The notes beneath the pieces were generated by a model. It searched no databases. It was not told where the DNA came from and was given only the letters and a program-made list of their open reading frames with translations. From Octopus sinensis (taxonomy: Eukaryota): a stretch of DNA of 64,000 nucleotides. The stretch spans positions 5,270,001 to 5,334,000 of the forward strand of contig NC_043026.1 in NCBI RefSeq assembly GCF_006345805.1. The letters run 5' to 3'. This document shows positions 10,537-49,135 of the stretch, piece after piece (position 1 is the first letter of the stretch; every line of letters starts with the position of its first letter). A program made the position numbers and the translations under genes.

Positions 10537-12093
10537 GATATTTCTTTATTACCCACTAGGGGCCACATAGAGGGGGACATTACAAACATTGGGGACATAG
10601 AACAATACGATTACAACGAATGAAAAATGAATTTTGAAAGTGATAATATGAAAGCGATGCTAACGGCCCCATCTGCTAGCATCACTTACCTGTCCTTTGG
10701 TTGTTACTCCCACACAAATATTCCTCGTTCAGTTCCAATAACAAAACCTTTCATCTCCATTCTTACTTTAAACGTTTCCTCCAAATCTCTCACGGTTTCT
10801 TCCATCATTCTCACCTCCTTCACTTCCCAATCCTTCCTTTCACACTTTATCATCAAATCGTCCATTCGTTCCTTTCCAATCACTGCATACCTGATCTGTC
10901 CTCTCTCACACCATTTATATTCCTCCATTGTCTTTTTAATTTTTCCCTTTCCTGTCATAAATACAAAGTTTGGCCTGGGTTCTTCTTTGGTGTCTTGTCT
11001 GTGTGCATCTTTTGTTTTTTGTTTTCTTGTTGGAGGGGAGCGGGTGGGTTCACTGTCTGCAGGGGAAGGATGGGACTCAGAGGGTGCGGGTGGTGTTGGG
11101 GAGGATTGGGGTTCAGTATTGTTCAACTTTCTCCTTCTCTTTCTTTTTTTTCTTTCCTCTACCCATTCGTTCTGGGCCTCTTCTTCAGTTGTTTCACACT
11201 CCACTGGATTCCGTTCTTCTTCTTTATTCTCTTCTTCTCTTTGTACCTCTATAACAATTTCCTTTGGTGGGGGAGGGCAGTTAGCTCTTATGTGGCCTCT
11301 CAGGCCACACTTGTAGCAGGGCGGGGCTCTGCCCTCCACCCACACTCTCATGATGATATTTCCCATTTTTATGTTTTCAGTTAGCCTTTCCAGTATTTCG
11401 GCCTCCGCTTGCACATTCATATCTAGAGTAGCACCCCTCCAGCCTTCATATTTTATGGTAGCATGGAGGATGTCCACCTCTTCTTCACATGTGGGTAGAA
11501 GGAATACCTTATCCGTCCTTACCGCCTTGGCTGCCATCTTTCTTGCTGCATTCTCGCTACTAAATTGCACCATCACCGTGCCAAATTCCATGCCTCTTGT
11601 TAAATAAACAATTTCCTCCTCTGTTCTTTTCAACGCCTCTTCAATGAATTCCATTCTGACTATTTCTACTTTTTTGTTTCCATTTGCATATTCTCTGTAT
11701 TTTATTGTCCTGCGATCGAACCACTCACCACGCTTCGTTGGTGGTGACAATTCAACCTCACCGCCTTCTTTTTCCATAAATTCTTGGAAGCCTGGCAACT
11801 TGACCAGGTCTACCTCTTTTTCTCCCGACTTCTTCGCCACTCCTGCATATGTATTGCCAAGTTTCTCGTCCATCCTCTTCACTGCCTCTTCGGAAGTTGA
11901 CAACTCCGATAAACTTTCAAAGATTCCTTGTCCGACCATCCCTCCCGTTAGGGAAGGGCAGTCCATCCTCTCCTTGTCTGTCTCAACACAGACAGACAAA
12001 AACCAAAAACCGTATAACAAAAACGTTCAACAATAATTCAACGATAAATATTCAGCAACTTACTTTAGCAAACACGTGTGGTTCGTACGAAAA
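10537..12093 (-). mobile_element. ORF1-only Tx1-type element, copy B
   Basis: ORF 10704-12020 in the track; the probable ATG is at ~11965 (MDCPSL). It has a CCHC knuckle and an in-frame 90-bp deletion at ~11488, with the same 5' start (TTTTCGT.CGAACCACACGTG) and 3' tail as A. Confidence 0.85.
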
Positions 12094-12937: not shown

Positions 12938-14088
12938 TTTTTCGTCCGAACCACACGTGTTTGCTAAAGTAAGTTGCTGAATATTTATCGTTGAATTATT
13001 GTTGAACGTTTTTGTTATACGGTTTTTGGTTTTTGTCTACCCACATATTTGAACAGGAAAACCACTGGAATTAGGGTGGAGGGAATACCCCCACATATAG
13101 AAGGTGAATGGATAGCGGCAGCGGTAATCAAAGGATGTGAAGAAGAGGTGGACATCCTCCATGCTACCATAAAATATGAAGGCTGGAGGGGTGCTACCCT
13201 AGATATGAATGTGCAAGCGGAGGCCGAAATACTGGAAAGGCTAACTGAAAACATAAAAATGGGAAATATCATCATGAGAGTGTGGGTGGAGGGCAGAGCC
13301 CCGCCCTGCTACAAGTGTGGCCTGAGAGGCCACATAAGAGCTAACTGCCCTCCCCCACCAAAGGAAATTGTTATAGAGGTACAAAGAGAAGAAGAGAATA
13401 AAGAAGAAGAACGGAATCCAGTGGAGTGTGAAACAACTGAAGAAGAGGCCCAGAACGAATGGGTAGAGGAAAGAAAAAAAAGAAAGAGAAGGAGAAAGTT
13501 GAACAATACTGAACCCCAATCCTCCCCAACACCACCCGCACCCTCTGAGTCCCATCCTTCCCCTGCAGACAGTGAACCCACCCGCTCCCCTCCAACAAGA
13601 AAACAAAAAACAAAAGATGCACACAGACAAGACACCAAAGAAGAACCCAGGCCAAACTTTGTATTTATGACAGGAAAGGGAAAAATTAAAAAGACAATGG
13701 AGGAATATAAATGGTGTGAGAGAGGACAGATCAGGTATGCAGTGATTGGAAAGGAACGAATGGACGATTTGATGACAAAGTGTGAAAGGAAGGATTGGGA
13801 AGTGAAGGAGGTGAGAATGATGGAAGAAACCGTGAGAGATTTGGAGGAAACGTTTAAAGTAAGAATGGAGATGAAAGGTTTTGTTATTGGAACTGAACGA
13901 GGAATATTTGTGTGGGAGTAACAACCAAAGGACAGGTAAGTGATGCTAGCGGATGGGGCCGTTAGCATCGCTTTCATATTATCACTTTCAAAATTCATTT
14001 TTCATTCGTTGTAATCGTATTGTTCTATGTCCCCAATGTCTTGTAGTGTCCCCTCTATGTCGCCCCTAGTGGGTAATAAAGAAATATC
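12938..14088 (+). mobile_element. ORF1-only Tx1-type element, copy B' (inverted duplicate of B with a ~497-bp 5' deletion that removes the ATG)
   Basis: ORF 13049-13921 is nearly identical to the C-terminal part of B; the 14-mer CTCTCTTTTGGGCT is at 12924-12937 and 14089-14102. Confidence 0.85.
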
Positions 14089-22379: not shown

Positions 22380-25085
22380 CAGTCTGTTTTACGCCAGTCT
22401 GTTTTTGTCATTTGCTGTTGATTACCGGTTTGTGAATTTAACTATTGTTACTTTGTGTCATATATATATTGTGTAATTTGTGTAAAAACTGTTATTAGCC
22501 TTCGCGCGAAGGCTACGTATTAAAATTCCACCCTACGGGGGAATTGTTTTGAAACAATTATTGTGAAACAATTTAAAATATACACAAAAGGCCTGCGAAG
22601 CCAAAATTTTTGAAGGCTTGTCAAAGCCAATTGAAAAGGCTTGTAAAAAGCCACATCCAGAGATGGAGACTCCTATCTCATACTCACCTGTATCAGGTGA
22701 AGAAAGTTCACCGGCGGTGACGCCAGAAAAAGAAGAGGCCCCAGCGAAGAAGTTCGCAGAAGTTGCAGGAAAAAGACAAAAGAAAATCAACACAGATAAG
22801 AGCAACTTAGAAAAGTATGAAGCACTTTTGAAAAAGGAAGGAAATGAAATAGCAGTGGAATCAGACGTCAGAAAGAAAGAAGAAGTAGAAAGAAAAAGGA
22901 TTATCTACAAGACATACAATACAACGATGAAAAGCATTCAAAGAGTGGAGGAAAAAAAATAGAGGATTGTCTGAAGACAATAAGGAAAGACATTACGTAT
23001 ATAAACCGAGGCAGAAAGTTTGGAACAGTTGAGGTGAGGTTTAGGACGGAGGAGATAGCCAAGAAGCTATCGACCGAACCTCAAAAAGCGGAGAATATAG
23101 TCCTTCTCCCCCCTGTACAGAGGCAGAAGGACCTCAAAAATATTAATGAAAAATATTCCGCCAGAGGCGGACGCCACGTGCCTGGTGGTGGCAGTGATGT
23201 TGGGCCTGGAGGACAAGATCACTATCCTCCAGGCTACAGTAGAGGAGGAGGGGTTTTGGCAAGGCCAATGTATCACAATGGTGATTCAGGCGGAGGTCCA
23301 AACGTTAGAAGAAATACCGGAGATATTGAGGCTCAGCGAGGAGGAGAGGGTGCTAGTGTTTGTGGAGGGCAGAAAGCCGAGGTGCTTCGGCTGCGGTAAA
23401 AAGGGGCACGTAAGAGCGGAGTGCCAACCTAAACCGCAGGAAGCAGCACCGCCGGAAAAAGAAAAAACAGAAGAGAAAACAGAAGAGAAAACACCAGAAA
23501 CTACAGAAACCAAAGAGGTAGAAGAAACAACAAGCGGGGAAGAAAAGGAAAAAGAGGAGGGGTGGTCAAAAATTACCAAAAAAAAAACGGAAAACAGAAA
23601 CCACCCCTCAGATAGAGAGCCAAAAAAAGAGGAAAGAAGCGACTAATACATTTATGGCCATTAAGGCTACCAACAACAGGCTAGTTAATGTTTTGGCAGC
23701 CATGGCCAAAGTGGAAAAAATTAAAAAAACAAAAGACTGTATTGTTTATAGAATAGGCCGGAAGGATTACGGACGGATAAAATCCGATTTCTTTCACGAC
23801 GTGGGCCCTCTGAGATTGGACATATCTCCATATCTATATGAGGGCCTGCGTCGGACTCCCCCACGAGCCCAGGAAAAAAATAAAAGTGAAGAAGATGACG
23901 AAAAACAAGTTGAACAAGTCGAACCACTGATATAAGGTAAGTTATGGATTGCATTTATGTTGGTTGTTTAAATGTGCGCGGCCTGGGATCAAGCTGGAAG
24001 CAAGGTCGCTTCCTTAATGATATCAGGTCGCGTAATTTGGATGTTATTGTCGCTACAGAAACCCGGTTAGAGGGGCCAAGAGGTCTACTCCCGCTGTTTG
24101 ATGGCTACGAGAGTTTTTACTCTCCGGCCAGTCCTACAGGCGGGGGTGGGGTGCTGGTCCTATTAAAAAGAAACCGGGTTTTTGAGAAAAAGTTAATTTT
24201 TTCAGACCCAGAAGGTAGGCTGGTCGTCATGGATTTGACGTTCAGTAACGGTAAAGTTATCAGACTGGTTGCAATTTACGCACCCAACCAAAAAGGGCAA
24301 AGTGATTATTTTCGAGAACTGGAAAACTTTCTTGGTACTTCGCATTCATTAGTTGTGCTAGGAGACTTTAACACAATTTGCAAAGCGGATGTAGATTGTG
24401 TTGGCTTGCGTCCAGATAGAAAAGGTAACATTGGCTTCTTGGAACTGCTAAGCCGCTTTGAGCTAGCAGATCCTTATAGGTTGGAATTTCCGAACGCGCC
24501 ATTGTGGACATGGTCAAACAGCGACGGATCTTCCAGGTCATATATAGATAGGATACTAATTAGAAAAGTAGACAGAAAAATAGCTAAGTGTCCACAGTTT
24601 TACCTGGTCAGCTACAGTGATCATAAAATGGTCACCTGTAAGCTTGACATAGATAAAGTTAAAAATAGAGGCTCCGGTTACTGGAAACTTAATACGTCCC
24701 TTTTGGCGATTAAGGAGTACAGAGACCGGATTAGGACTATAATTCAGAGGGCGCTATCTGGTGCCATCATTAATAACAAATGGTGGTATGCCCTAAAGCG
24801 AGCCATCAAATTCGAGACTATTAGATATAGCATAGGATTAGTGGCTAGAGAGGCTAGGAGGGAATCTACTCTAGTTAAGGAATTAGAGGAAGCCTTGAAA
24901 ACTGGCTCTGCGGTTCAGGTGGCGGCCAAGAGACTGGCATTAAACCAGCACCTCGAGGCCAAACACATGGGCTGCATTGTCAGGGCTAGGATCCGCGCAA
25001 TGGGTTGTGATGTTAGGCCTGGAGGACAAGATCACTATCCTCCCGGCTACAGTGGAGGAGGAGGAGTATTGGCAAGGCCAATGCA
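22380..25085 (+). mobile_element. Tx1-clade non-LTR retrotransposon: frameshifted ORF1 plus ORF2 APE domain, truncated before RT
   Basis: ORF1 pieces 22618-22962, ~22980-23140, 23146-23646 (CFGCGKKGHVRAEC) and 23654-23935; ORF2 starts at 23944. Confidence 0.92.
23944..25010 (+). CDS. L1/Tx1-type apurinic-like endonuclease (ORF2 N-terminus), truncated
   Basis: LNVRGL, ATETRL, GGGVLVLL, AIYAPN, LGDFNT, WTWSN..SYIDRILI, SDHKMV, GSGYWKLNTSLL. Confidence 0.9.
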
Positions 25086-26133
25086 TCTCCATTCTTTCAT
25101 TTATTTGTATATATCTATATATATGTATATATATACATATATATTTTTTATATACCTATATATACACATAAATATATACACATATATATTCATATATACA
25201 CATACATATATATACGACAGGCTTCTTTCAGTTTCCGCCTGCCAAATCCACTGAGAAGGCTTTGGTCGGCCTGAGGCTACAGTAGAAGACACTTGCTTAT
25301 GTATATATGTGTGTATGTGTGTATTATCATCTTGAGAGGAGCTTTTCACATGCCACCAACGTTGGCCTCTGTGGCACCCGACACCCGGATGCTGCTTCCG
25401 TGTGCCAGTTCCATCACATCCGCATCAGCCATGATTAGGATTTCATTTGTTCTGATGGCTCTTCTCAACAAAAAAAGTTCTGGATTCTTTTCAACTGACT
25501 AAAAATTCTCCAGGATTGTGCCCCAGCATGGCCGTACTCTAATGATTAAAACAGACAAAAGAGAACGAAAAAGATGTGTGTACATACACAGGCTTGCATA
25601 TATGTATGTGTGTGTGTGTATAAATATACTGACATGTATGCCTATTGTCATTGACCTCTTTTATAACCTCTCACCCCTTTAACACTCATGTCACCCCTTT
25701 CCCTCTCTGCCACTAATCTGTCCTAATCTCTCTTGCTCTTGCCATTACTTATCTCTCATCCACTCCTCCCTCCTAACAATCTCACCCTAATCTGCTGGGG
25801 GTGTCACTAAGGATGACAGTGGTTCTCTCTTTTCTGTTTGTCAGGCATTTCAATTACTTTGCCGTGTGGCACATTGCTGTACTTGAGAAGAGACCTGTCC
25901 ACCACACTTGAAATGATCTCCTAAAACCAAAGGGCCACATAAAAAGCATTGGTGATGGGGCCATGTAAAAGCACCCAGTACATTCTGTAAAGTGGTTGGT
26001 GTTCGGAAGGGCATTCAGCTGTAGAAACCAACCCCAAACAGGCCATGGAACCTGGTTCAGCCCCTGGCTTTACATCTGCTATTGGACTGTCCAACCCATT
26101 CCACAATGGAAAATGGAGGTTACATGATAATGG

Positions 26134-39849: not shown

Positions 39850-40520
39850 ATATGTGGCACTTGGTGAAGAATGGAGTTTGATGTTGCTTATCCTCATTTG
39901 CACCTCTTGCCGTGAGGTAGGCTCATCTGGGACTCTCGACAGGAAGAGGTCCAGCTTTGATTTTAAAACCTCTACATGCACTTTGTGCAGGCTCCTCAGG
40001 CTCTTTGGGAGAATATTAAAAAGCTGTGGGTCCCTGAAGCCCAGGCTATTGCAGTAGCTGGTCCTGAAGCATGATGGCATTGCTGGGATCTTTGGCACTA
40101 CGTAGTGTCGGCTTCTTCTGGCATGGTGTAGCTTACAATGCCAAAATTTGGCACAATTCCTTCCAGGATCTTCCAGATATATATTACTGCATACTTCTCC
40201 CGTCTTCTCTCCAGGGAGTAGAGTCTTAGCTGTCCCAACCTTTCCCAGTTGCTGAGCTGTTGCAAAGAGATGATCCTCTTTGTGAATCTTCTCTGGATTG
40301 CTTCAAGACCCGCTGTTAATTTCACACTGGTGGGTAACCATAGCTGTGAGCAGTAATCCAGGCGGCTGAGGACGAATGTCCGCCAGAGGACCATCATGGT
40401 TTCCTTATCTCTGGTTCTGAATGTTCTTAGGATCCATCCAGCCAGTCGTCTGCACTTTGTCGCCATCCTGGTAATGTGCACTTGGAAAGAGGTATCCTCA
40501 CTCATGTCGATACCCAGGGT
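39850..40520 (-). mobile_element. CR1-group LINE ORF2 C-terminal fragment (frameshifted)
   Basis: LGIDMS..GWILRTFRTRD..LWRTFVLSRLDYCSQLW..LEAIQRRFTKRI..LYSLERRRE, then QLFNILPKSLR..KSKLDLFLSRVPDEP. Confidence 0.9.
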
Positions 40521-41289
40521 GCTAGAAACAACAGCCAAATCTCCCTTAAATCACACACATTTTCCCTCGACCTCTTACAAAACATTTTGCCAACAAATTT
40601 CTTTTTAATCGTAATCTACATCGTTTGAAAGTTATTTCTATAAAATTTCATTCAAAAATACCCATTTCCTGAAATTTATGAGGAGGGAAAATGTCTGGTT
40701 GTGTGAATTTTGCGAAACTCCTTTCAGCAACCCTTCAGAAAATGTTTTTCCAACAAATCCTTACAAAAACTCAATCTATAGGATCTAAGCGATTATTTGT
40801 TGAAAGTTTCCTTCAAAAAATATCTATTTTTCTGCAAGTTACGAGGAAACAAAGTCGGTGGGGGTATATATCTGTAGTTATGCCGAATTTGCTTCCTCAC
40901 AACTTTCACAAAATTAAATATTTTTTAATGAAATTTTCTACAAATATTCTTCAGATGGTTTAGATTCCGATTAAATCGGAATTCATTGTGAAAATCGTTT
41001 GTCCCTGGGTGGGAAAAGCAGTTTCAGAAAATTCACAAGATTCGCCTTTGTTATGAAAGACAAAAAAGTTTTCCCAATAAATCCCCATAGAATCGGAATC
41101 TACACCATCTGAAGCATATTTGTAGGAAATTCCATGAAAAATATCCATTTCTCTGCAAGTTATTAGAGAAGAAGCATATACATCATAAAGGAACCTTTAT
41201 ACACATGTATATTTATATATATCTACATATACACACATGTCTTTGCTATGTTTTTTAAACACATAAAACTCATAGATGCATACTTTTAT

Positions 41290-41670
41290 AATATTTTACA
41301 CTTAAACCGCCACAGGACAATATTTTTAGAGTTGCTTCTTAAAGTGTCCTTCACGTTTTTTATGAAAAACGATACAAATTTCAGAGTATTTGGCTGTTAT
41401 TTCTAGCATGATGTTAGGCCATCTATAGGACAATATTTGACATGGATGCTTTGCAAATTGTCCTTCGATTTTTATTTGTGATGAAACAAAAATGTGAAGG
41501 TTTAGGTGGCTCTTTCTAGCATGAAATGAGACCATATACAGGTCAATTTTATTTATGAATGCTTCTTATCTGTCCTTCAAATTTTATATGAAAAATAAAG
41601 TGGTTTCTATTTCTAGCGTGAAAAATGACCAGCTATGGGAAAGCTTTTACTGAATGCTTCTTAAAATGTC
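41290..41670 (+). repeat. Diverged ~115-120-bp minisatellite, about 3.5 units
   Basis: TTTCTAGC.TGA at ~41400, ~41513 and ~41610, each followed by GCTT..AA.TGTCCTTC. Confidence 0.65.
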
Positions 41671-41692
41671 CTTCTCTTTTTTTATGAATCCC

Positions 41693-41860
41693 CAACAGCA
41701 ACAACAACAACAACAACCCTACGAGGACGAAAGGCAATGTTTTTGCGTGTGTGCAGTTGGAATGTCACTGCAACAACAACAACAACAACCCTACGAGGAC
41801 GAAAGGCAATGTTTGTGTGTGTGTGCAGTTGGAATGTCACTGCAACAACAACAACAACAA
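41693..41860 (+). repeat. ~75-bp tandem duplication anchored on (CAA)n
   Basis: CCCTACGAGGACGAAAGGCAATGTTT...GCAGTTGGAATGTCACTG occurs twice. Confidence 0.9.
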
Positions 41861-42131
41861 TCTATTCTTATTAAACGTTAAAAACTATCAGATGCAGACT
41901 GCACACACGCACACACAACGCTGATGACGACGATGATGGTGGTGGTGATGTTGATGATGATGATGGTGATGACGATGGTGATGATGACGATGATGATGGA
42001 GGCGGAGGTGGTGGTTGTCGTCTGCTGTTGTTGTTGTTGTTGTTGGTCGTCTGCCTTTTAATGGAGAATCAATGATTATGAAAGTCTCTGGTTTCGGACC
42101 AGACATTCCTATACATACATGCATGCATATA

Positions 42132-42185
<54 letters not shown>

Positions 42186-42324
42186 AACATATATACTTAT
42201 AGCCTTATTTGTATACATACATTCCTAAATATGTGTGTATATATATATAAACACATGTACACATACTGTATATAAATATACACACACACACAAAGAGAGA
42301 GTCTTGAGGAATGTTACAACAATA

Positions 42325-42382
42325 AGTGTTAGTGTGTAGAATGTAATGTATGCGATGCAGGTTCGATTCCCGGGCGAAGCCA
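42325..42382 (+). other. Degenerate tRNA-like sequence (tRNA pseudogene or SINE head) just downstream of the large gene, antisense to it
   Basis: AGTGTGTAGAAT (A-box-like) and GGTTCGATTCCCGG..GCCA (perfect B-box); no foldable anticodon arm. Confidence 0.45.
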
Positions 42383-42438
42383 TTTACAACAACAACAATA
42401 ATAAGAAGAAGATTGAAGTTTAATATTTCTGGAAATAT

Positions 42439-45400
42439 TTATTTGTCAAAATAAAAGAAAGCAAAAGATTGACGTCCAGGAATAATTCCAAAAACCATCA
42501 AAGAATTGTCTGAAACATCCAAACCAAGAACTGCAAAGACTTCATTATCATCCCGTCTGAGGAGTAAATATTTTGGATTATCTTTTAATCCCAGGATTTC
42601 ATCATCTTCAGATGTTTCCTCTTCAATATGTCCAGGTATTTCGTAAATATTGTTTATTAAATCTGTTATATAAACACATTCACCAATTATGGTCAGACGA
42701 AGTCTTGCAATATAATATCTCAGACCATAAAATATTTCTCCTTCTATTCTTATCCTCCTCACCAAAGACTTTTCCCTGAACCATTCCACGAAACAAAAAA
42801 CTTCCCATCTTCTAAACACCTCCTCCCCTATCTCCCTCCTCAAAACTAAAACATCACCAAAAGATGTGACTCCCACATCATCCACACCTTCATCTCCCTC
42901 CAACCTTCCTGATCTCCCCATCTTCCCATGACACACTTCATCTTTACATTTCCCATCTTTGATATCAACCACATCCACATAATAACGGTCAAAGATGTCA
43001 GGGTCATCGCAATAATAGTAATCCTTGTTGTTTCTCCATTCTTTTTTGTATTTCTTGTGTCTCTCTTCTTGAGTTATGTCTCTAATATAATGACCACCAC
43101 ACACGAGTTGATTGTCGTTGTATTTATAAATCCTGTTGTAGTATTTCTCAGTTCTGATGGTTTTTAAACAACGGAGATCCCTGTTGAAGACCCTCATTTC
43201 TCTCCCAAAGGCGAGAATGAAACATTCCTCTGTCCACCGACATATGTCCAGTGCTGGTCGTTGTTGTTGTTCATGTTGAAGTATGTCAACTGTTGTTGTT
43301 GTTGTTCTGATTAATGTGACACTTTCTCGAAACATCAACACACTCACATTCTCATCTAACTTAATTAGTTTACTGTTCACGTCCCTAATGTCCATCAAAT
43401 CATAATCAACAGGTTCCTCGAATGCAGGAATGGAAAAAGGGACCATTGCTGTCCTATATGGAAGTCCCCTCACTGATATTTCATCAATTCCTGAATTATT
43501 AATCTCCGCTATGTAATTACCACATCTCACCTTTAATCTACCTTTACCAATTATTTCACCTGATTTACCTCTTCTTCTTCCTCCTCCATCTCCATCTCCT
43601 CCTCTGTATTCCAATTTATTAAGTAATTCATTACTGAATATTTCCTTGTTCGTTTCAGATGTAATGGAAGGGAAATGAAGACCAGAATCAAGATTTAATA
43701 ACGGCACAGATTCCAGAATGTTCACTTGGTTCCCATCAATCTTTATGCAATGACATTCAATCAATTCATTATGTACACACCAGTAAATACCTGCCACTTT
43801 TCTCCATATTACACCATAAGGGATGAGACTCGACCAAACTTGAGATGTCTGCAAATCTTCTCCATTCAGTTGAAATATTTCTTTCCTTTTAGGAACCGTG
43901 GCCATTATGTGTGATTCTTGTGTAAAACACACACCACCAACTAAACTTGCAACATTTCTGTGACATAGCAACTGGCCGTCTTCATCGAATATTTTAATAT
44001 TTCCATTATTGGCTTTTTCACACACAACTGTCTTTCCTTCCTCAGAGACATCAAAATCTTTTACTTGAACAGGACATTCGTCTGTTTGTAAACGAGCAAC
44101 CGGGAAGCTGTCTCGATTCACCATAAACAACCCTTCAACATACAATTCATTCCTTTCTCCCCTCCTGGGGTTTCCAACAAACCTTGGTCCTTTACAGTCT
44201 ATACTGGAGAAAAGTACTGTATGTTTATAAATTCTTTTATTTAAAAATATCCTCTTGTATTCCCCATTCTGGGTCAAACACAAAATATTTTTATATTCAT
44301 GTAAACCTGAATATTTCTCCCACTGACCATAAATGTACAAAAAACTGTCATCAATTGTCATCCTGTCATCATTATCAAAATAATACTTCATGAAGTGTTT
44401 GACTGAATGTAAATATTGACCACCACTGTTGAAGAAAATGATGAATCTCCTGTTTAAGACAATGATGACATCTTCATCAGTAACTTTAATATCCCGGATT
44501 GTATCAGAATTATATCCACATTCTATTCTCCATATTAATGGTTCAGGTATGTCTATTTTTTTTATTTTCCACACACTCGAATGTATTTCATCAAGATCAA
44601 CAAAATGCAAATGTCTTACATCTCTCCATTTACTAAAAACCAGTTGATTGTTTGATAAAGAAGCCACACATTCATAATTCTTTCTCATTTGGTAAATTAC
44701 CAACGACAGTGGAAATTCCACTTTTAATGTCAACAGTTGGGGTTTATCATCATCATAAGGATCCCAATTCGTAATGACCAGTGTGTTTGACTGCCATCGA
44801 CACATTTTAATATCACTATAAACATTCACTTTGATTGAATCCATAAGGTGACCATCCAATGTGAATATCTTAATGTTTCCATTGTTCTTGTCCCATCCTG
44901 CAATCAGATTATTTTCAGTAAGAACCAAACGATTAATCTCCGCTGGTCCTTTGTCTCCCAAATGTTTTGGGAGAAGAATATGTCTACCTTTATCAGAAGC
45001 TGTCAGGTCCTGTAGATATAAAGTGGAAGACAACATTTCACTGATGGAAATGTTTCTGGAAAATACATCCACCAGGTCGATATAATAATTAAGTTGATTA
45101 TTAGTAACGAGATCATTAACCAACAAATTCTGATCATTTATGGCAAACATACGGCTTCTGTCTATCAGATAAACAGATGTTGGGTCAATAGTTCCACCTT
45201 GGAGACTGAGGGGACGTTTCACTTGGGACATTAAAACACTGGGGACCATCTTAATTCTACTAACATAACCATATCTAGTTTTACCACCACGAAGACGATG
45301 ACGACGATGACCACCACCACCTATTCTAGTGTTGTACTGAAAAGCTTTTCCCCTAGTAACGATTAATAGCTTTTCTGTTTTCTTGTCTATTGATAATGAT

Positions 45401-47886
45401 TTCACAAACACAGGGATATTAATTGTCTTAATTACTTCAACTTGATTATAATAATTGATGGCTAAAATGTCTAAATGTGATGGTTTATCACAATAACAAA
45501 CAATTTCACATTCACCCATCTTACACACCCGTACATAAGGCTGCCTTAATGATACACTTCTCACTCTCTTTGATAGGTTTCCAATGACCCTTAATTGTTT
45601 CTGTAGGGGTAATGTGACCCCTATATGATTAGAATCCCATCGACATATATCTGTGGCTGTAGACGGCAGAGATAATCTGGACACAATGTCTCCTTCCTCA
45701 GAAATGTACAACAAGCTATCATGCTTGATGTCGGACACCATCAACTGTCCATTGGACAGATTACATATTTCGCCAATGACAAGTTTTTGGTCATTCTCCT
45801 TTTCTTTGAGTCGTAGATTTAGATTTCTGATGTAAGGATTTTTCGTGGGTAAAAGACAGCCAGACGACCGATCATGATTCTTGTAAAGAAGAACCCTGTT
45901 GAGTTGAGTTGCCGGGACATAAAGAGTTCCTTGGAAAACAGCAATGTGAGGGTGAACAGGGAAAGGCAGTTCCCACTGCCATTTCATTTCTCCATATAGA
46001 TCGTAACATCTCAGAATAGAGTGTCTCCTGAAGAGGACATAGAAATAAACATTATCAGAGTAGATGTGATGAGGGTGGCCATAGAATGGAAGGTATTTTT
46101 GAAAAAGTTCTTCACCACATGTGGAATAAAATACCATTTTATTTTCGTTTCCATCTACGACTACAAAATTAATTGGAGTTGCAGCAATGCTGACATTATG
46201 ATGTTCCAGAGAAATTCTTTCTGCAATGTCAACTTTATCTTTGTGGATCAAGAGGATTTGGACCTCGATTTTGTTTTCAGTGGTGGTCACAGCTAGACAC
46301 TTATTTGATACAACATGACATAGTTTAATGTAATCAGTGTGGACTTTCATTAAAGGGCCTTTCATTAGCCCAGGGCATGTGATACACTGAAATTCTTTGT
46401 TTTCATGGTAAGACACCAGAAATCCTTTAGAATTCATTCTACAAAAGCAAGAAGGAATCTCAGGGAAAGTTGAATTATTTTGGTTAATTATTTCTCCAGT
46501 CTCAGTGATTAATATAGCTTTATTATTCCTGTAGAATATTAATATAGAAGATGTAGACATAGGTAGAATATTAGTAATGTTGTAGCAATCCTCAATATGA
46601 ATATAGTTGTTCAATGTTGGGGTCCATAGCTGGGGGTTATATGATTGCCTGGGCCAAAAGTCTTCATTTGTTCCAATGATATGAAGGACATCAAAATAAT
46701 CAGTTACAAAAATGTTTTCTTTGCCAACAGAAATATGGTGGCATTTCATGCCAATTTCTCTTGTTGTCACAGCACCTGTACCTGATATCCGATAAATAAT
46801 ATGTCCCTGGAGGACATAAAAATGGTTTTGGTACACAGTGATGTGGCTTGGAATGTCCAGGGAATTGGTATCCACCTCAAATAACTGCTGACCATCCACA
46901 TTGTAACAGGTAACCCTGTTAATATTGGAAAAGGATACTAAGAGTTTGTTTTGTGCTCCTACAGCAATATCTGAAGGGGTTTCTTTCGTTATGAATTCAT
47001 ATTTTATTCTATTCTCTTCCCAGTCAATGACGTATATGGTCCGACCAAACATTTCTACACCTATAAGCGTAGAATGTTCCAAATAAGAAACCAAGATTAA
47101 TCCTAGCTGAATTCTTTTGATTCTCGAACTTAAAGGGTTGATAATAAGAATCATTTTTCTGAAGGGCAGGGTGGCGAGGACTGTGTCTTCACTGATTCTG
47201 GTAAAATCCGTGACAGAAGATGAGCAACGAACATCATTTCTGTTGCCGTCTCTTGTTATACAACATATTGTCATACAGTGGCGGGAATATGTTACAATAC
47301 CCCCTTGCATGACAACAATATTGGATATTGGGTTGCTTAAGTCTTCACCAGATTCCTCAATCTCTACTTCTCTGGTCACAACTGGCCGAAGAGGACGAAA
47401 TTTTGTGGTTACTTTTGGTGGTTCAATGGTCTTGTGGTTGTATGGGTTACAGGTGACATAAATGTCAAAGAGTCTTTGTTGAAACCAATCAAGGTTTTGG
47501 TGAACAAAATCATTATTTTGTTTTGCAAATTCCAGAAATCTTGGCATTTTACGTTTGATATTACGTAAAATTCGAGATCCATTTAAACCCAGAGAGTCCA
47601 TGCGCTTACAATCATCCTTTACATAATCTATAAACGTATTGATGTGGTCTGTTTTGATTAGTGTTCGGTAACATGTCACAATATGAAGGAAACTTGGTAA
47701 CATGGACTTTTCCTGTTCTTCAGATTTCTTTCTGTCTTTTCTTTCCTGTTCTTCTGTTTTCTTTGTGTTTTGTGTATGTAATATTTGGGTAAGATTTGGT
47801 GTAGTTTCCTTATAAATTGCTGTTGTATCACAGACTGTGGTGGGAATGAGAGCCAACATTTTGTTTTCTTCATTAATCTTCTCCAT
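42439..47886 (-). CDS. Uncharacterised 1815-aa protein with six tandem NHL-like beta-propeller modules and a ~90-aa helical N-terminal domain; single coding exon
   Basis: 5.4-kb uninterrupted ORF in repeat-riddled DNA; AAAATGG start context with an in-frame upstream stop; NHL-like blades (PSDIAVGAQNKLLVS, PSHITVYQNHFYV, PHIAVFQGTLYVP); ATTAAA ~15 nt after the stop. Confidence 0.85.
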   Translation of the reverse strand: MEKINEENKMLALIPTTVCDTTAIYKETTPNLTQILHTQNTKKTEEQERKDRKKSEEQEKSMLPSFLHIVTCYRTLIKTDHINTFIDYVKDDCKRMDSLGLNGSRILRNIKRKMPRFLEFAKQNNDFVHQNLDWFQQRLFDIYVTCNPYNHKTIEPPKVTTKFRPLRPVVTREVEIEESGEDLSNPISNIVVMQGGIVTYSRHCMTICCITRDGNRNDVRCSSSVTDFTRISEDTVLATLPFRKMILIINPLSSRIKRIQLGLILVSYLEHSTLIGVEMFGRTIYVIDWEENRIKYEFITKETPSDIAVGAQNKLLVSFSNINRVTCYNVDGQQLFEVDTNSLDIPSHITVYQNHFYVLQGHIIYRISGTGAVTTREIGMKCHHISVGKENIFVTDYFDVLHIIGTNEDFWPRQSYNPQLWTPTLNNYIHIEDCYNITNILPMSTSSILIFYRNNKAILITETGEIINQNNSTFPEIPSCFCRMNSKGFLVSYHENKEFQCITCPGLMKGPLMKVHTDYIKLCHVVSNKCLAVTTTENKIEVQILLIHKDKVDIAERISLEHHNVSIAATPINFVVVDGNENKMVFYSTCGEELFQKYLPFYGHPHHIYSDNVYFYVLFRRHSILRCYDLYGEMKWQWELPFPVHPHIAVFQGTLYVPATQLNRVLLYKNHDRSSGCLLPTKNPYIRNLNLRLKEKENDQKLVIGEICNLSNGQLMVSDIKHDSLLYISEEGDIVSRLSLPSTATDICRWDSNHIGVTLPLQKQLRVIGNLSKRVRSVSLRQPYVRVCKMGECEIVCYCDKPSHLDILAINYYNQVEVIKTINIPVFVKSLSIDKKTEKLLIVTRGKAFQYNTRIGGGGHRRHRLRGGKTRYGYVSRIKMVPSVLMSQVKRPLSLQGGTIDPTSVYLIDRSRMFAINDQNLLVNDLVTNNQLNYYIDLVDVFSRNISISEMLSSTLYLQDLTASDKGRHILLPKHLGDKGPAEINRLVLTENNLIAGWDKNNGNIKIFTLDGHLMDSIKVNVYSDIKMCRWQSNTLVITNWDPYDDDKPQLLTLKVEFPLSLVIYQMRKNYECVASLSNNQLVFSKWRDVRHLHFVDLDEIHSSVWKIKKIDIPEPLIWRIECGYNSDTIRDIKVTDEDVIIVLNRRFIIFFNSGGQYLHSVKHFMKYYFDNDDRMTIDDSFLYIYGQWEKYSGLHEYKNILCLTQNGEYKRIFLNKRIYKHTVLFSSIDCKGPRFVGNPRRGERNELYVEGLFMVNRDSFPVARLQTDECPVQVKDFDVSEEGKTVVCEKANNGNIKIFDEDGQLLCHRNVASLVGGVCFTQESHIMATVPKRKEIFQLNGEDLQTSQVWSSLIPYGVIWRKVAGIYWCVHNELIECHCIKIDGNQVNILESVPLLNLDSGLHFPSITSETNKEIFSNELLNKLEYRGGDGDGGGRRRGKSGEIIGKGRLKVRCGNYIAEINNSGIDEISVRGLPYRTAMVPFSIPAFEEPVDYDLMDIRDVNSKLIKLDENVSVLMFRESVTLIRTTTTTVDILQHEQQQRPALDICRWTEECFILAFGREMRVFNRDLRCLKTIRTEKYYNRIYKYNDNQLVCGGHYIRDITQEERHKKYKKEWRNNKDYYYCDDPDIFDRYYVDVVDIKDGKCKDEVCHGKMGRSGRLEGDEGVDDVGVTSFGDVLVLRREIGEEVFRRWEVFCFVEWFREKSLVRRIRIEGEIFYGLRYYIARLRLTIIGECVYITDLINNIYEIPGHIEEETSEDDEILGLKDNPKYLLLRRDDNEVFAVLGLDVSDNSLMVFGIIPGRQSFAFFYFDK

Positions 47887-48003
47887 TTTATGAATATAGA
47901 ATTATTATCTTTTTCTGTTAAATATATTCTTTTCTGTGGATTTTGTTTTCTTCCTTTGGAATACAATTTATCTCTTCAAAATTCACTAATTTTTACATGA
48001 AAG

Positions 48004-48030
48004 CTGAAATAAAATGAAAGCTTTATTAGT
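48004..48030 (-). promoter_or_regulatory. 3' splice acceptor of the coding exon
   Basis: The minus strand reads ACTAATAAAGCTTTCATTTTATTTCAG|CTTTC: branch-like CTAAT, a pyrimidine tract and CAG, 117 nt before the ATG. Confidence 0.65.
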
Positions 48031-48353
48031 TTTGTGAAAAGCTTTTGATAAAATGATATTTACTTGATTCATTCAAAGAATTTCAAGGAAAACACACATT
48101 TCATTAAATATATTAAACAAATTGTTTATTTGACAGTGAAGTTAAACATTTAAACTGTTTACAATGGAATAATCATTAGAAATAAAACTTGAAGATATAA
48201 ATACACCATTATCTTTATTGACTGAATATAAGTGATCGTGAAAAGTTTTGTAGTAAGAAGGAATATAAATATTTTGTTGAGGTTATTTCTACAGATATTA
48301 TCGGTAGAAATTATAGCCAGGACTGATTTCCTGCTACAACATTTCATATCGAA

Positions 48354-48444
48354 ATGTCAGACGGAAACAAACAATGAGATCAAAGAGAAAAACATCTGTT
48401 GTTTGTTCTCATTGTTTATCTCATTGTTTGTTTACATCTGACAT
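48354..48444. other. ~90-nt hairpin
   Basis: ATGTCAGACGGAAACAAACAATGAGAT pairs with ATCTCATTGTTTGTTTACATCTGACAT (27 bp, 2 mismatches). Confidence 0.8.
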
Positions 48445-48660
48445 CTCCATAGGAAAGGTTTTAGCAAAAAATCAGAGCCAACTATAATTTCTATGGAATA
48501 TCAATAGAATAATGTGAAAAACACTGCTAACAAAGTAGAATGTGGTGTTGACTTCTAAAACAATTTAATATATTTTACAGGAATTTATGGTTGCATAATG
48601 AAATGCCACGTCCCTAACCTTACAGCCATGCCCCCATCTTTTTTTGGTGATATTTTAAAG

Positions 48661-48698
<38 letters not shown>

Positions 48699-48774
48699 CC
48701 TTTCTACTATAGGCACAAGGCCTGAAATTTTGGGTGTGGGGTCTAGTCGATTACATCAACCCCAGCACCTAACT

Positions 48775-49135
48775 GTAGTGGGTGCTTTTACATGCCACTG
48801 GCACGGGGCCAGTCAGGCAGTACTGGCAATGACCTCTCTCGAATCTTTTACACATGCCACTGGTATAGGTGCCAGTAAGGCAATGCTGTAACGATCACAC
48901 TCGAATGGTGTGTTTTATGTGCCATCGGCATGGAGGCCAGATAGCTGCTCTGGCAACGATCATGCTCGGATGGTGCCCTTAACAACCTACTAGCACGGGG
49001 TCGAGTGCCAGTAAGCCGACGCTGGTAACGATCACACTTGAATGGTGCCTTTTATGTGCCACTGGCAAAGAACCCGGTTAACTGCTCTGTCAGTGACCAC
49101 ACTCGTATGGTGCTCTTTGCACCCCGCTAGCACAG
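48775..49135 (-). repeat. ~60-bp subunit array of the RTE-3'UTR family (also 50560-50730 and 51530-51960)
   Basis: GGTG..TTT.A.GTGCCACTGGCA...CTGGCAACGA.CAC.CTCGAAT units, reverse-complementary to those at 3412-4320. Confidence 0.7.

What the first reader, a model, noticed from the sequence alone, without database searches (positions are those of the whole stretch)
42439..47886. Single-exon 1815-aa protein built from six tandem NHL-like beta-propellers
Seen: a motif series (start strand, then a D-I-C-R-W-like blade, then a Y-x-x-(L/V) blade) recurs six times: DFTRIS (~47200), CFCRMN (~46440), DICRWD (~45645), KMCRWQ (~44800), GVCFTQ (~43930) and DICRWT (~43240), a period of ~230-290 aa. The third motif recurs as DYIKLC, PYVRVC, NYECVA, PYGVIW and YYNRIY. 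Knowledge: NHL-type six-bladed propellers of this style normally occur as one C-terminal domain in B-box/TRIM-like proteins, a family much expanded in molluscs. Here there is no RING or B-box and no evident signal peptide or TM helix. Inference: a cytosolic multivalent binding protein (lectin-, RNA- or pathogen-sensor-like). An intact 5.4-kb ORF amid decayed repeats implies selection. This is the best candidate for an undescribed host system in the window.
Basis: partly seen in the sequence, partly recalled or inferred. Interest (0 to 1): 0.75.

Follow-up and report, generated by a model that had tools for sequence, protein, structure and literature searches.

The report
Octopus six-propeller hypervariable protein family
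This intact 1,815-residue octopus gene encodes six NHL-type beta-propellers in a row; it belongs to an undescribed octopod family with at least 100 copies in this genome, in which one face of the fourth propeller evolves like the binding site of an immune-type receptor.

Summary
The ORF (42439..47886, minus strand) and its six-fold repeat are real. AlphaFold2 models give tandem all-beta propellers with about 24 strands per module. A profile of the modules matches the C-terminal propeller of molluscan RING-B-box-NHL proteins (hhalign 99.7%, E 8.5e-26) and the solved NHL domains of Brat, TRIM2/3, Mei-P26 and TRIM71. No RING, B-box, signal peptide or TM helix is present. The genome is Octopus sinensis. 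The gene is one of at least 100 loci, about 30 with open frames of 1,700 aa or more, clustered on one 15-Mb scaffold. Six-propeller relatives occur only in Octopus species and Argonauta, all labelled "uncharacterized". The copies spread by segmental duplication, not transposition. Propellers 1-3 are under purifying selection (omega 0.3-0.5). The middle of propeller 6 has omega 1.65. In propeller 4, nonsynonymous change is concentrated about 10-fold in the B-C/D-A loops of one face (omega 1.5-2.1). Copies are recombinant mosaics. Best reading: a cytosolic, RING-less, multivalent recognition family with hypervariable binding faces. Ligand, expression and function are untested, and this copy has lost its distal upstream sequence.

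The parts
42439..47886 (-). Complete single-exon ORF, 1815 aa plus stop
47335..47886 (-). N-terminal region, aa 1-184: K/E-rich start, then predicted helices at aa 64-145 (low confidence). The most divergent part of the family, occurring in two classes
   Evidence: AF2; conservation; classes; no match to the TRIM coiled-coil, PDB or Pfam
46651..47334 (-). Propeller 1, aa 185-412; purifying selection (omega 0.33)
   Evidence: AF2 pLDDT 70-86
45871..46608 (-). Propeller 2, aa 427-672; 24 predicted strands; omega 0.52 overall; BC/DA loops 1.38 against 0.41 for the opposite-face loops
44989..45789 (-). Propeller 3, aa 700-966; the first half is the best conserved part of the family (omega 0.44); the second half holds a G/R-rich loop and is poorly modelled
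44122..44949 (-). Propeller 4, aa 980-1255; the hypervariable module. Nonsynonymous changes are concentrated in the B-C and D-A loops (omega 1.5-2.1)
   Evidence: aligns to the whole NHL propeller of P0070
43447..44103 (-). Propeller 5, aa 1262-1480; conserved first half (omega about 0.6); low AF2 confidence
42442..43389 (-). Propeller 6 and C-terminus, aa 1500-1815; the highest AF2 confidence (pLDDT 80-95)
42577..43086 (-). Hypervariable stretch of module 6, aa 1601-1770; omega 1.65 (p 7e-4), replicated in O. vulgaris alone (1.89, p 0.011)
47887..48616 (-). Conserved 730-bp upstream block, a likely proximal promoter or 5' UTR. 97-98% identical in three of four close paralogs against 93-94% for the CDS. 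Found in at least 40 copies, always next to a family ORF. In this copy homology breaks at 48616
40519..42438 (-). Shared 3' flank of the duplication unit, with a 72-bp tandem repeat, (TGA)n, and a MITE-like indel at 40668-41192

Best explanation
The ORF is an intact member of an octopod-specific family of about 1,800-residue proteins with no evident signal peptide or TM helix, so probably cytosolic. Each protein has a short helical N-terminal region followed by six six-bladed NHL-type beta-propellers. The propellers descend from the single C-terminal propeller of molluscan RING-B-box-NHL (TRIM-like) proteins by six-fold internal duplication, with loss of the RING and B-box. A slowly evolving lineage is kept as 1:1 orthologues on large chromosomes. 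A second lineage, to which this gene belongs, was amplified by segmental duplication to at least 100 loci, mostly on one small chromosome, and evolves by birth-and-death and recombination. Proposed mechanism (inferred): the protein is a multivalent intracellular recognition molecule. Conserved propellers (1, 3, 5) would form the scaffold or contact invariant partners. One face of propeller 4, more weakly propeller 2, and an insert in propeller 6 would be the variable ligand-binding surfaces, so that the paralogue set forms a repertoire. Lacking a RING, it cannot itself be an E3 ligase, so it would act by binding, sequestering or bridging. The ligands are unknown. By analogy with Brat and LIN-41, whose NHL top face binds RNA, and with diversified TRIM sensors, fast-evolving viral or transposon RNAs or proteins are the leading candidates. 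Shown: ORF, repeat, fold, homology, copy number, duplication mode, selection pattern. Inferred: cytosolic location, binding role, ligand class, expression.
For: Fold. Homology to NHL propellers: hhalign 99.7%, E 8.5e-26 over 223 columns; profile against 1.84 billion proteins, where the first non-family hits are RING-B-box-NHL proteins of Acanthosepion, Argonauta and Haliotis; PDB hits Brat 1e-5, TRIM3 2e-5, TRIM2 2e-4, Mei-P26 3.5e-4; BLASTP of module 4 to P0070, E 4e-7, with shared motifs. No RING, B-box or TM helix. Family size and clustering: at least 160 module matches, about 30 open frames of 1,700 aa or more, about 50 loci on C30. Six-module proteins only in Octopus and Argonauta. Conserved lineage at 91% identity between O. 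vulgaris and O. bimaculoides. Segmental duplication with variable extents. Frame maintained: P(no stop) about 0.001 at 3% substitutions. Selection: M1 0.33, M2 0.52, M3a 0.44 against M6b 1.65 (p 7e-4). M4 BC/DA loops omega 2.08 (p 2e-5) in O. sinensis and 1.46 (p 1e-3) combined. Top-versus-bottom Fisher p 0.008, 0.003 and 5.5e-6. Nonsynonymous changes per site 5.0 and 3.6 against 0.33 and 0.55. Mosaic copies.
Against: No expression, localisation or binding data exist. The window ORF is not in any public protein set, and its shared distal upstream sequence is missing beyond -730, so this particular copy may be silent. Module-wide omega for propeller 4 is above 1 only among close O. sinensis copies (1.56); it is 1.01 in the combined set and 0.75 in O. 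vulgaris alone, where synonymous sites are saturated. Counts use parsimony on FastTree trees, in a family with clear recombination, from 7-23 sequences. The strand and loop classes come from AF2 DSSP at moderate confidence, and calling the BC/DA face 'top' is by convention. Pfam NHL is sub-threshold. Propeller 5 and the second half of propeller 3 are poorly modelled. Absence of a signal peptide was judged from hydropathy only.
Confidence: 0.6

Rival explanations
1. Selfish or conflict-driven ampliconic family, for example meiotic drive and suppressor or a germline or reproductive function. In this reading copy number and rapid change reflect intragenomic conflict on one small chromosome rather than recognition of pathogens.
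For: Amplification is largely confined to one scaffold or chromosome in both O. sinensis and O. vulgaris. omega is high in parts. Turnover is fast: no partner above 94% identity in the sister species, and the closest O. vulgaris locus is not syntenic. The proximal upstream block is homogenised.
Against: Nothing links the scaffold to sex or drive. The face-specific pattern on a binding-type fold fits ligand recognition in either scenario. Conserved 1:1 members on autosome-sized chromosomes argue for an ordinary cellular role at the origin.
Confidence: 0.15
2. This particular copy is a young, not yet decayed, non-functional duplicate. The family overall is drifting under relaxed constraint, and the apparent hypervariability comes from old cassettes shuffled by gene conversion.
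For: Whole-gene dN/dS is 0.7-1.0 among recent copies. Many copies are truncated or carry stops. The window copy has lost the shared sequence beyond -730 and is not annotated. dS is 2-4 times higher in modules 4 and 6b than in neighbouring modules, consistent with mosaic ancestry.
Against: All nine G000 ORFs examined in full are intact (1,792-1,867 aa), and all seven O. vulgaris main exons are open for 1,795-1,889 aa. Neutral simulation gives about 0.1%. Purifying selection on modules 1-3 is strong (p from 3.1e-7 to 3.6e-26). Relaxed constraint cannot give omega of 1.5-2 in one set of loops and 0.4-0.6 in the opposite loops of the same module.
Confidence: 0.15
3. A conserved structural or scaffold protein, like multi-WD40 ciliary, ribosome-biogenesis or DDB1-type adaptors, whose copies merely raise dosage.
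For: The top Foldseek hits are IFT-A, axonemal, UTP and DDB1 tandem propellers. A slowly evolving lineage exists.
Against: Those hits reflect the generic multi-propeller shape (TM 0.1-0.25, identity 6-12%). Sequence homology is to NHL, not WD40. Dosage amplification does not predict localised omega above 1 or module mosaics. The family is restricted to octopods.
Confidence: 0.07
4. An ORF carried by, or derived from, a transposable element.
For: High copy number. The ORF is a single exon. The neighbourhood is rich in LINE, SINE and MITE fragments.
Against: No transposase, integrase, RT, endonuclease or helicase domain. No fixed termini: the 48616 edge is private to this copy, and other copies share 1.2 to more than 4.3 kb more at about 94%, with differing 3' extents. 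Copies cluster on one scaffold rather than being dispersed. There is clear descent from a host TRIM-like propeller.
Confidence: 0.03

Closest known systems
Molluscan RING-B-box-NHL (TRIM-like) proteins, e.g. Acanthosepion pharaonis CAE1315789.1 (P0070) and Haliotis rubra XP_046584772.1 (P0088)
   Same: The propeller is homologous over its full length (hhalign 99.7%, E 8.5e-26; BLASTP E 4e-7), including the G/D-I-C-x-W...V-T-L-P-x-x-K and K-x-Y-x-x-V-A blades. These families are also lineage-expanded.
   Different: They have one propeller at the C-terminus behind a RING, two B-boxes and a coiled coil. The octopus protein has six propellers, no RING or B-box, and an unrelated N-terminal region.
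Canonical TRIM-NHL proteins (Brat, TRIM71/LIN-41, Mei-P26, TRIM2/3, Thin)
   Same: Six-bladed NHL propeller, detected by a profile search of PDB sequences (E 1e-5 to 0.017). In Brat and LIN-41 the propeller's top face is the RNA-binding surface (established knowledge). This is the same class of face that is hypervariable here.
   Different: They are single-copy, strongly conserved developmental regulators with E3 ligase modules. Here there is no ligase module, there are six propellers and at least 100 copies, and selection is diversifying.
Diversified TRIM sensors (primate TRIM5alpha, teleost finTRIM/bloodthirsty B30.2 domains)
   Same: Works alike in principle (own knowledge): an intracellular, multi-copy family in which positive selection concentrates in the surface loops of the C-terminal recognition domain.
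   Different: Their recognition domain is a B30.2/SPRY, not an NHL propeller. They keep the RING-B-box-coiled-coil effector part. They have one recognition domain per chain.
Tandem six-bladed YWTD propeller receptors (LRP4, LRP5/6, LRP2)
   Same: Several six-bladed propellers in a row in one chain. They are among the Foldseek hits.
   Different: They are extracellular, with EGF spacers and a signal peptide and TM helix. They have the YWTD sequence class, and they are conserved rather than amplified.

Membership tests
NHL-repeat six-bladed beta-propeller (Pfam PF01436, clan CL0186) | A closed propeller of six four-stranded blades in about 240-290 residues | tested here: met
   AF2 DSSP gives 23-24 strands in modules 2 and 4 and about 21 in module 1 at pLDDT 70-90; module 6 has pLDDT 80-95. 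Foldseek returns only propeller proteins. Module 5 and the second half of module 3 are below pLDDT 50, so not all six are individually confirmed.
NHL-repeat six-bladed beta-propeller (Pfam PF01436, clan CL0186) | Match to the Pfam NHL repeat model at its gathering score | tested here: not met
   No NHL hit for the whole protein at E up to 10. Only 4 of 46 modules match, best E 0.021, below the 20-bit cutoff. A family member, P0055, reaches 18.5 bits.
NHL-repeat six-bladed beta-propeller (Pfam PF01436, clan CL0186) | Demonstrable homology to bona fide NHL propellers | tested here: met
   hhalign 99.7%, E 8.5e-26, against proteins that themselves pass Pfam NHL. hmmsearch against PDB: Brat 1e-5, TRIM3 2e-5, TRIM2 2e-4, Mei-P26 3.5e-4.
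TRIM / RBCC (TRIM-NHL subfamily) | N-terminal RING finger | tested here: not met
   No RING model hit. None in the conserved relatives P0052, P0053, P0055 or P0222.
TRIM / RBCC (TRIM-NHL subfamily) | One or two B-box zinc fingers | tested here: not met
   No B-box hit. The N-terminal profile does not align to the B-box region of A5.
TRIM / RBCC (TRIM-NHL subfamily) | Coiled coil between the B-box and the C-terminal domain | tested here: inconclusive
   Helices are predicted at aa 64-145 but at pLDDT of about 50. There is no profile similarity to the TRIM coiled coil (probability 0.6%). No coiled-coil predictor was run.
Transposable-element ORF | Mobility enzyme domain, fixed element termini or TSDs, and dispersed copies | tested here: not met
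   No such domain. Duplication extents vary. Copies cluster on C30.
WD40 propellers | WD40 repeat signature, typically seven blades | tested here: not met
   No WD40 repeat-model hit; only isolated sub-threshold hits to WD-type propeller-domain models in 1-2 of 46 modules. The Foldseek similarity is generic (TM 0.25 or less). The sequence profile points to NHL and PQQ-like blades.

The most novel reading that the evidence does not exclude
Octopods possess a germline-encoded, intracellular hypervariable receptor repertoire built on NHL propellers. It comprises dozens of intact six-propeller genes whose propeller-4 (and 2, 6) faces are diversified by positive selection and cassette-like recombination. 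The proteins would recognise fast-evolving viral or transposon RNAs or proteins, as an NHL-based counterpart of TRIM5/finTRIM, NLR or VLR-type diversity in an animal without adaptive immunity.
Probability: 0.3. Interest if true: 0.85.

Novelty: new variant of a known kind. Interest (0 to 1): 0.7.

Why it matters
Cephalopod immunity and genome defence are poorly understood, and the known octopus gene expansions (protocadherins, C2H2 zinc fingers, GPCRs) do not include this family. It is a large, lineage-restricted family with an unusual architecture: six NHL propellers and no ligase module. It has a conserved scaffold, face-specific diversifying selection, recombinant mosaics, and near-confinement to one small chromosome. 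That makes it a concrete, testable candidate for a new recognition repertoire. It would also show how a TRIM-type recognition domain can be detached from its E3 module and multiplied. Even if the ligand is not immune-related, the family is a natural experiment in the evolution of propeller binding surfaces.

Tried and rejected
- Plain self-BLASTP showed no repeats. Shuffle-calibrated Smith-Waterman and HMMs were needed.
- phmmer of the whole protein against PDB found nothing.
- Pfam on the whole protein gave only sub-threshold DUF5711 and tRNA_Me_trans hits.
- Foldseek on multi-module models could not tell the propeller class, because tandem WD40, YWTD and DDB1 proteins dominate the hits.
- I first read the sharp homology edge at 48616 as a possible element or transcript terminus. 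That was rejected: it is private to this copy, and there is no poly(A) at the 3' edge.
- The N-terminal region against the TRIM coiled coil and against PDB gave nothing.
- Module-wide omega above 1 for propeller 4 did not survive the addition of deeper O. vulgaris cassettes. I kept only the face-specific contrast, which replicates.
- Literature searches for the family, for LOC identifiers and for NHL/TRIM expansions in cephalopods returned nothing relevant.
- The look-up of encoding contigs does not serve the window's own genome.
- No transcript-level evidence could be obtained.
Full report
**1. Observation**

The window holds one long ATG-to-stop ORF at 42439..47886 on the minus strand, 1815 aa.

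The repeat is too old for self-BLASTP to see, but it is statistically real:
- Eight module pairs score 3.7-7.4 SD above shuffles (0 of 200 shuffles reach the score), at the offsets predicted by the motif anchors.
- HMMs built from each module across paralogues detect the other modules in register.

In a six-module alignment, the first three blades of each module align well. These include the D-I-C-R-W blade and the Y-x-x-V-C blade. The rest has diverged.

**2. Fold**

Two AlphaFold2 jobs with 22-sequence family alignments covered aa 1-966 and 967-1815.
- They give a low-confidence helical N-terminus (aa 64-145), then all-beta modules.
- Modules 1, 2, 4 and 6 are modelled at pLDDT 70-95. Modules 2 and 4 have 23-24 strands each, that is six four-stranded blades, and module 1 about 21.
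- The second half of module 3 and all of module 5 are below 50.
- Foldseek against PDB returns only tandem beta-propeller proteins (IFT-A, UTP21, axonemal WD proteins, LRP4/LRP2, DDB1), with E 1e-22 to 1e-11 but TM of 0.25 or less.

This confirms the fold but not the propeller class.

**3. Class and ancestry of the modules**

Pfam finds no domain in the whole protein. Its NHL model reaches only sub-threshold scores in 4 of 46 modules.

A profile of 46 modules from 8 family members (A3) gives a clearer picture:
- Against PDB sequences it hits the NHL domains of Brat (1e-5), TRIM3 (2e-5), TRIM2 (2e-4), Mei-P26 (3.5e-4), TRIM71 and Thin. It also hits PQQ-like and designer propellers for the later blades.
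- Against 1.84 billion representative proteins it finds about 20 family representatives. The next tier is 550-770 aa proteins carrying a single, full-module match at their C-terminus.
- These second-tier proteins are RING-B-box-NHL proteins of the cuttlefish Acanthosepion pharaonis (P0070, E 3.6e-23), Argonauta hians and the gastropod Haliotis rubra.
- BLASTP aligns module 4 (aa 979-1218) with the whole propeller of P0070 (E 4e-7). The alignment shows the shared landmarks GICLW...VVVTLPENKQ and KSYESVAS.
- Profile-profile comparison of A3 with 13 such proteins gives 99.7% probability and E 8.5e-26 over 223 columns.

The N-terminal 184 residues show no relation to the TRIM coiled coil, to PDB or to Pfam. 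No 19-residue window reaches TM-like hydropathy, and there is no evident signal peptide.

So each module is a divergent NHL propeller of the molluscan TRIM-like lineage. The RING and B-box are absent.

**4. The family**

Contig lengths identify the genome as Octopus sinensis. The window is at C30:5.27-5.33 Mb of a 15.1-Mb scaffold.

One 300-aa module finds at least 160 matches in this genome:
- About 50 loci lie on C30 between 1.5 and 15.1 Mb.
- Many more lie on small unplaced contigs.
- A few divergent copies lie on C1, C2, C9, C10, C25, C27, C28 and C29.
- Thirty loci have open frames of 1,700 aa or more. Others are truncated or carry stops.

In O. vulgaris most relatives sit on one 29.2-Mb chromosome. 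Six-module proteins are found only in Octopus vulgaris, sinensis and bimaculoides and in Argonauta hians. All are named "uncharacterized" or "hypothetical".

Two lineages (P0052, P0055) fall in clusters of 90% identity or more across the three Octopus species, on large chromosomes. P0052 is 91% identical between O. vulgaris and O. bimaculoides, and 41% identical to the window protein.

The window protein itself is in no public protein set. It has no partner above 94% identity even in the sister species O. vulgaris. No paper on the family was found.

**5. Host gene or transposon?**

Close C30 paralogues share the ORF, 730 bp upstream and 1.2-1.9 kb downstream with the window. The apparent sharp edge at 48616 is private to this copy:
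- All other copies continue to share 1.2 to more than 4.3 kb further upstream with one another, at about 94% and with TE indels.
- That sequence is absent from the window.

On the 3' side some copies share sequence to 40519 and others to at least 38760. There is no poly(A) at the edge. Beyond it lies a LINE RT tail.

Four things exclude a TE-borne ORF and indicate segmental duplication:
- the variable duplication extents;
- the clustering on one scaffold;
- the absence of any mobility domain;
- the descent from a host propeller.

The 730-bp upstream block occurs in at least 40 copies, always beside a family ORF. It is 97-98% identical in three of four close paralogues, against 93-94% for the CDS and 84-88% for the immediate 3' flank. 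It is therefore constrained or homogenised, and is probably the proximal promoter or 5' UTR. In several O. vulgaris relatives the gene model spans 11-23 kb, with upstream exons that encode a second class of N-terminus.

**6. Selection**

Whole-gene pairwise dN/dS is 0.7-1.0 among recent copies and about 0.5 for older pairs. All nine G000 ORFs examined are nevertheless intact, and all seven O. vulgaris main exons are open for about 1,800 aa. Substitutions alone at 3% per site would leave this frame open in about 0.1% of simulations.

The average hides strong heterogeneity. Tree-based codon counts used FastTree per region and Fitch parsimony, with up to 23 sequences from two species:

| Region | omega | p |
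|---|---|---|
| Module 1 | 0.33 | 4e-26 (deficit) |
| Module 2 | 0.52 | 4e-7 (deficit) |
| Module 3a | 0.44 | 3e-7 (deficit) |
| Module 5 | 0.57 | 6e-3 (deficit) |
| Module 6, aa 1601-1770 | 1.65 | 7e-4 (excess) |

The module 6 result also holds in O. vulgaris alone (1.89, p 0.011).

Module 4 as a whole has omega 1.56 (p 3e-5) among the O. sinensis copies. It falls to 1.01 once deeply divergent O. vulgaris cassettes are added, where synonymous sites are saturated. I therefore do not rely on the module-wide value.

The robust result for module 4 is spatial. It uses the AF2 strands to classify the loops:
- Nonsynonymous changes per site are 5.0 in the B-C loops and 3.6 in the D-A loops. They are 0.33 in the A-B loops and 0.55 in the C-D loops.
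- omega for the BC/DA loops is 2.08 (p 2e-5) in O. sinensis and 1.46 (p 1e-3) in the combined set. The opposite-face loops have omega 0.4-0.6.
- The two faces differ in each species separately (Fisher p 0.008 and 0.003) and in the combined set (5.5e-6).
- Module 2 shows a weaker version of the same contrast (1.38 against 0.41, p 0.004). Modules 1 and 3a show none.

By the usual propeller convention the BC/DA face is the "top" face, which is the ligand-binding face of NHL and WD40 propellers (established knowledge).

Copies are also mosaics. The N-terminus and module 1 occur in two deeply divergent classes joined to near-identical modules 3 and 5. In some O. vulgaris copies modules 1, 3a and 5 are 0.90-0.96 identical to the window protein, while module 4 is 0.57-0.64 and mid-module 6 is 0.36-0.43. 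This indicates recombination or gene conversion that homogenises the scaffold modules while divergent variable cassettes persist.

**7. Interpretation**

The following are shown: an intact gene for six NHL-type propellers, its membership of an octopod-specific amplified family, its descent from TRIM-like NHL proteins, segmental duplication, a maintained frame, a conserved scaffold, and hypervariable faces.

The following are inferred. The protein is a cytosolic multivalent recognition molecule, and the paralogues form a repertoire. The variable faces of propellers 4, 2 and 6 bind the ligand. Without a RING the protein would act by binding or bridging rather than by ubiquitin ligation. Candidate ligands are fast-evolving viral or transposon RNAs or proteins. 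This is by analogy with the RNA-binding top faces of Brat and LIN-41 and with diversified TRIM sensors (own knowledge).

The rivals are a conflict-driven ampliconic family, a silent young duplicate in a drifting family, a dosage-amplified scaffold protein, and a TE ORF. They are weighed in the Rival explanations section.

The main caveats:
- There are no expression data.
- This copy is not annotated and has lost its distal upstream sequence.
- The selection counts are parsimony-based, on recombining sequences.
- The structural classes come from moderate-confidence models.

**8. Verdict**

This is a new variant of a known kind: NHL propellers of TRIM-like origin in a RING-less six-propeller chain, massively amplified, with face-specific diversification. 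It is apparently undescribed and is of considerable interest for cephalopod immunity and genome defence.

Noticed in passing
window 40668-41192: A palindromic, MITE-like insert of about 525 bp in the shared 3' flank. It is present in this copy and some paralogues and cleanly absent from others.
   Followed up: partly
window 48287-48509: An inverted repeat of about 220 bp (hairpin-forming) inside the highly conserved 730-bp upstream block, present in all copies found. It could be an old MITE or a regulatory hairpin.
   Followed up: no
window 48617-48900: A SINE-like sequence with (ATT)n and an A-run directly abuts the point where this copy loses homology with all other copies. The insertion or rearrangement may have cut the gene off from its distal promoter or 5' exon.
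   Followed up: partly
window 45277-45321 (aa 856-870) and 43558-43605 (aa 1428-1443): G/R-rich (RGG-like) loops in modules 3 and 5. In paralogues the same loops carry K/R-rich, poly-T or poly-S runs. Loops of modules 4 and 6 in some paralogues carry long acidic D/N runs or SEDQI-type repeats. The loops tolerate large low-complexity inserts, and basic loops might contact RNA.
   Followed up: no
window 23941-25254 (+), 10704-12026 (-), 12995-13921 (+), and left of 40519: Retroelement remains: an ORF with an endonuclease/exonuclease/phosphatase domain (LINE), two zinc-knuckle ORFs in opposite orientation, and a LINE reverse-transcriptase tail abutting the 3' edge of the duplication unit.
   Followed up: partly
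G000 contig C30 (15.1 Mb) and O. vulgaris OX597841.1 (29.2 Mb): The amplified subfamily is largely confined to one small scaffold or chromosome in both species (about 50 loci on C30). Conserved members sit singly on large chromosomes. Why this chromosome is involved is unexplained.
   Followed up: partly
L040-L043 (O. vulgaris OX597841.1, 9.80, 21.88-21.92 and 22.03 Mb): Gene models of the second N-terminal class span 11-23 kb, although their main exon is open for about 1,800 aa. The family therefore has two alternative 5' ends, one single-exon and one spliced.
   Followed up: no
window 47887-48616 against 42439-47886: The non-coding upstream block is more conserved among paralogues (97-98%) than the coding sequence (93-94%), and far more than the immediate 3' flank (84-88%). 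This could be selection on a promoter or 5' UTR, or local gene conversion; I could not distinguish the two.
   Followed up: partly
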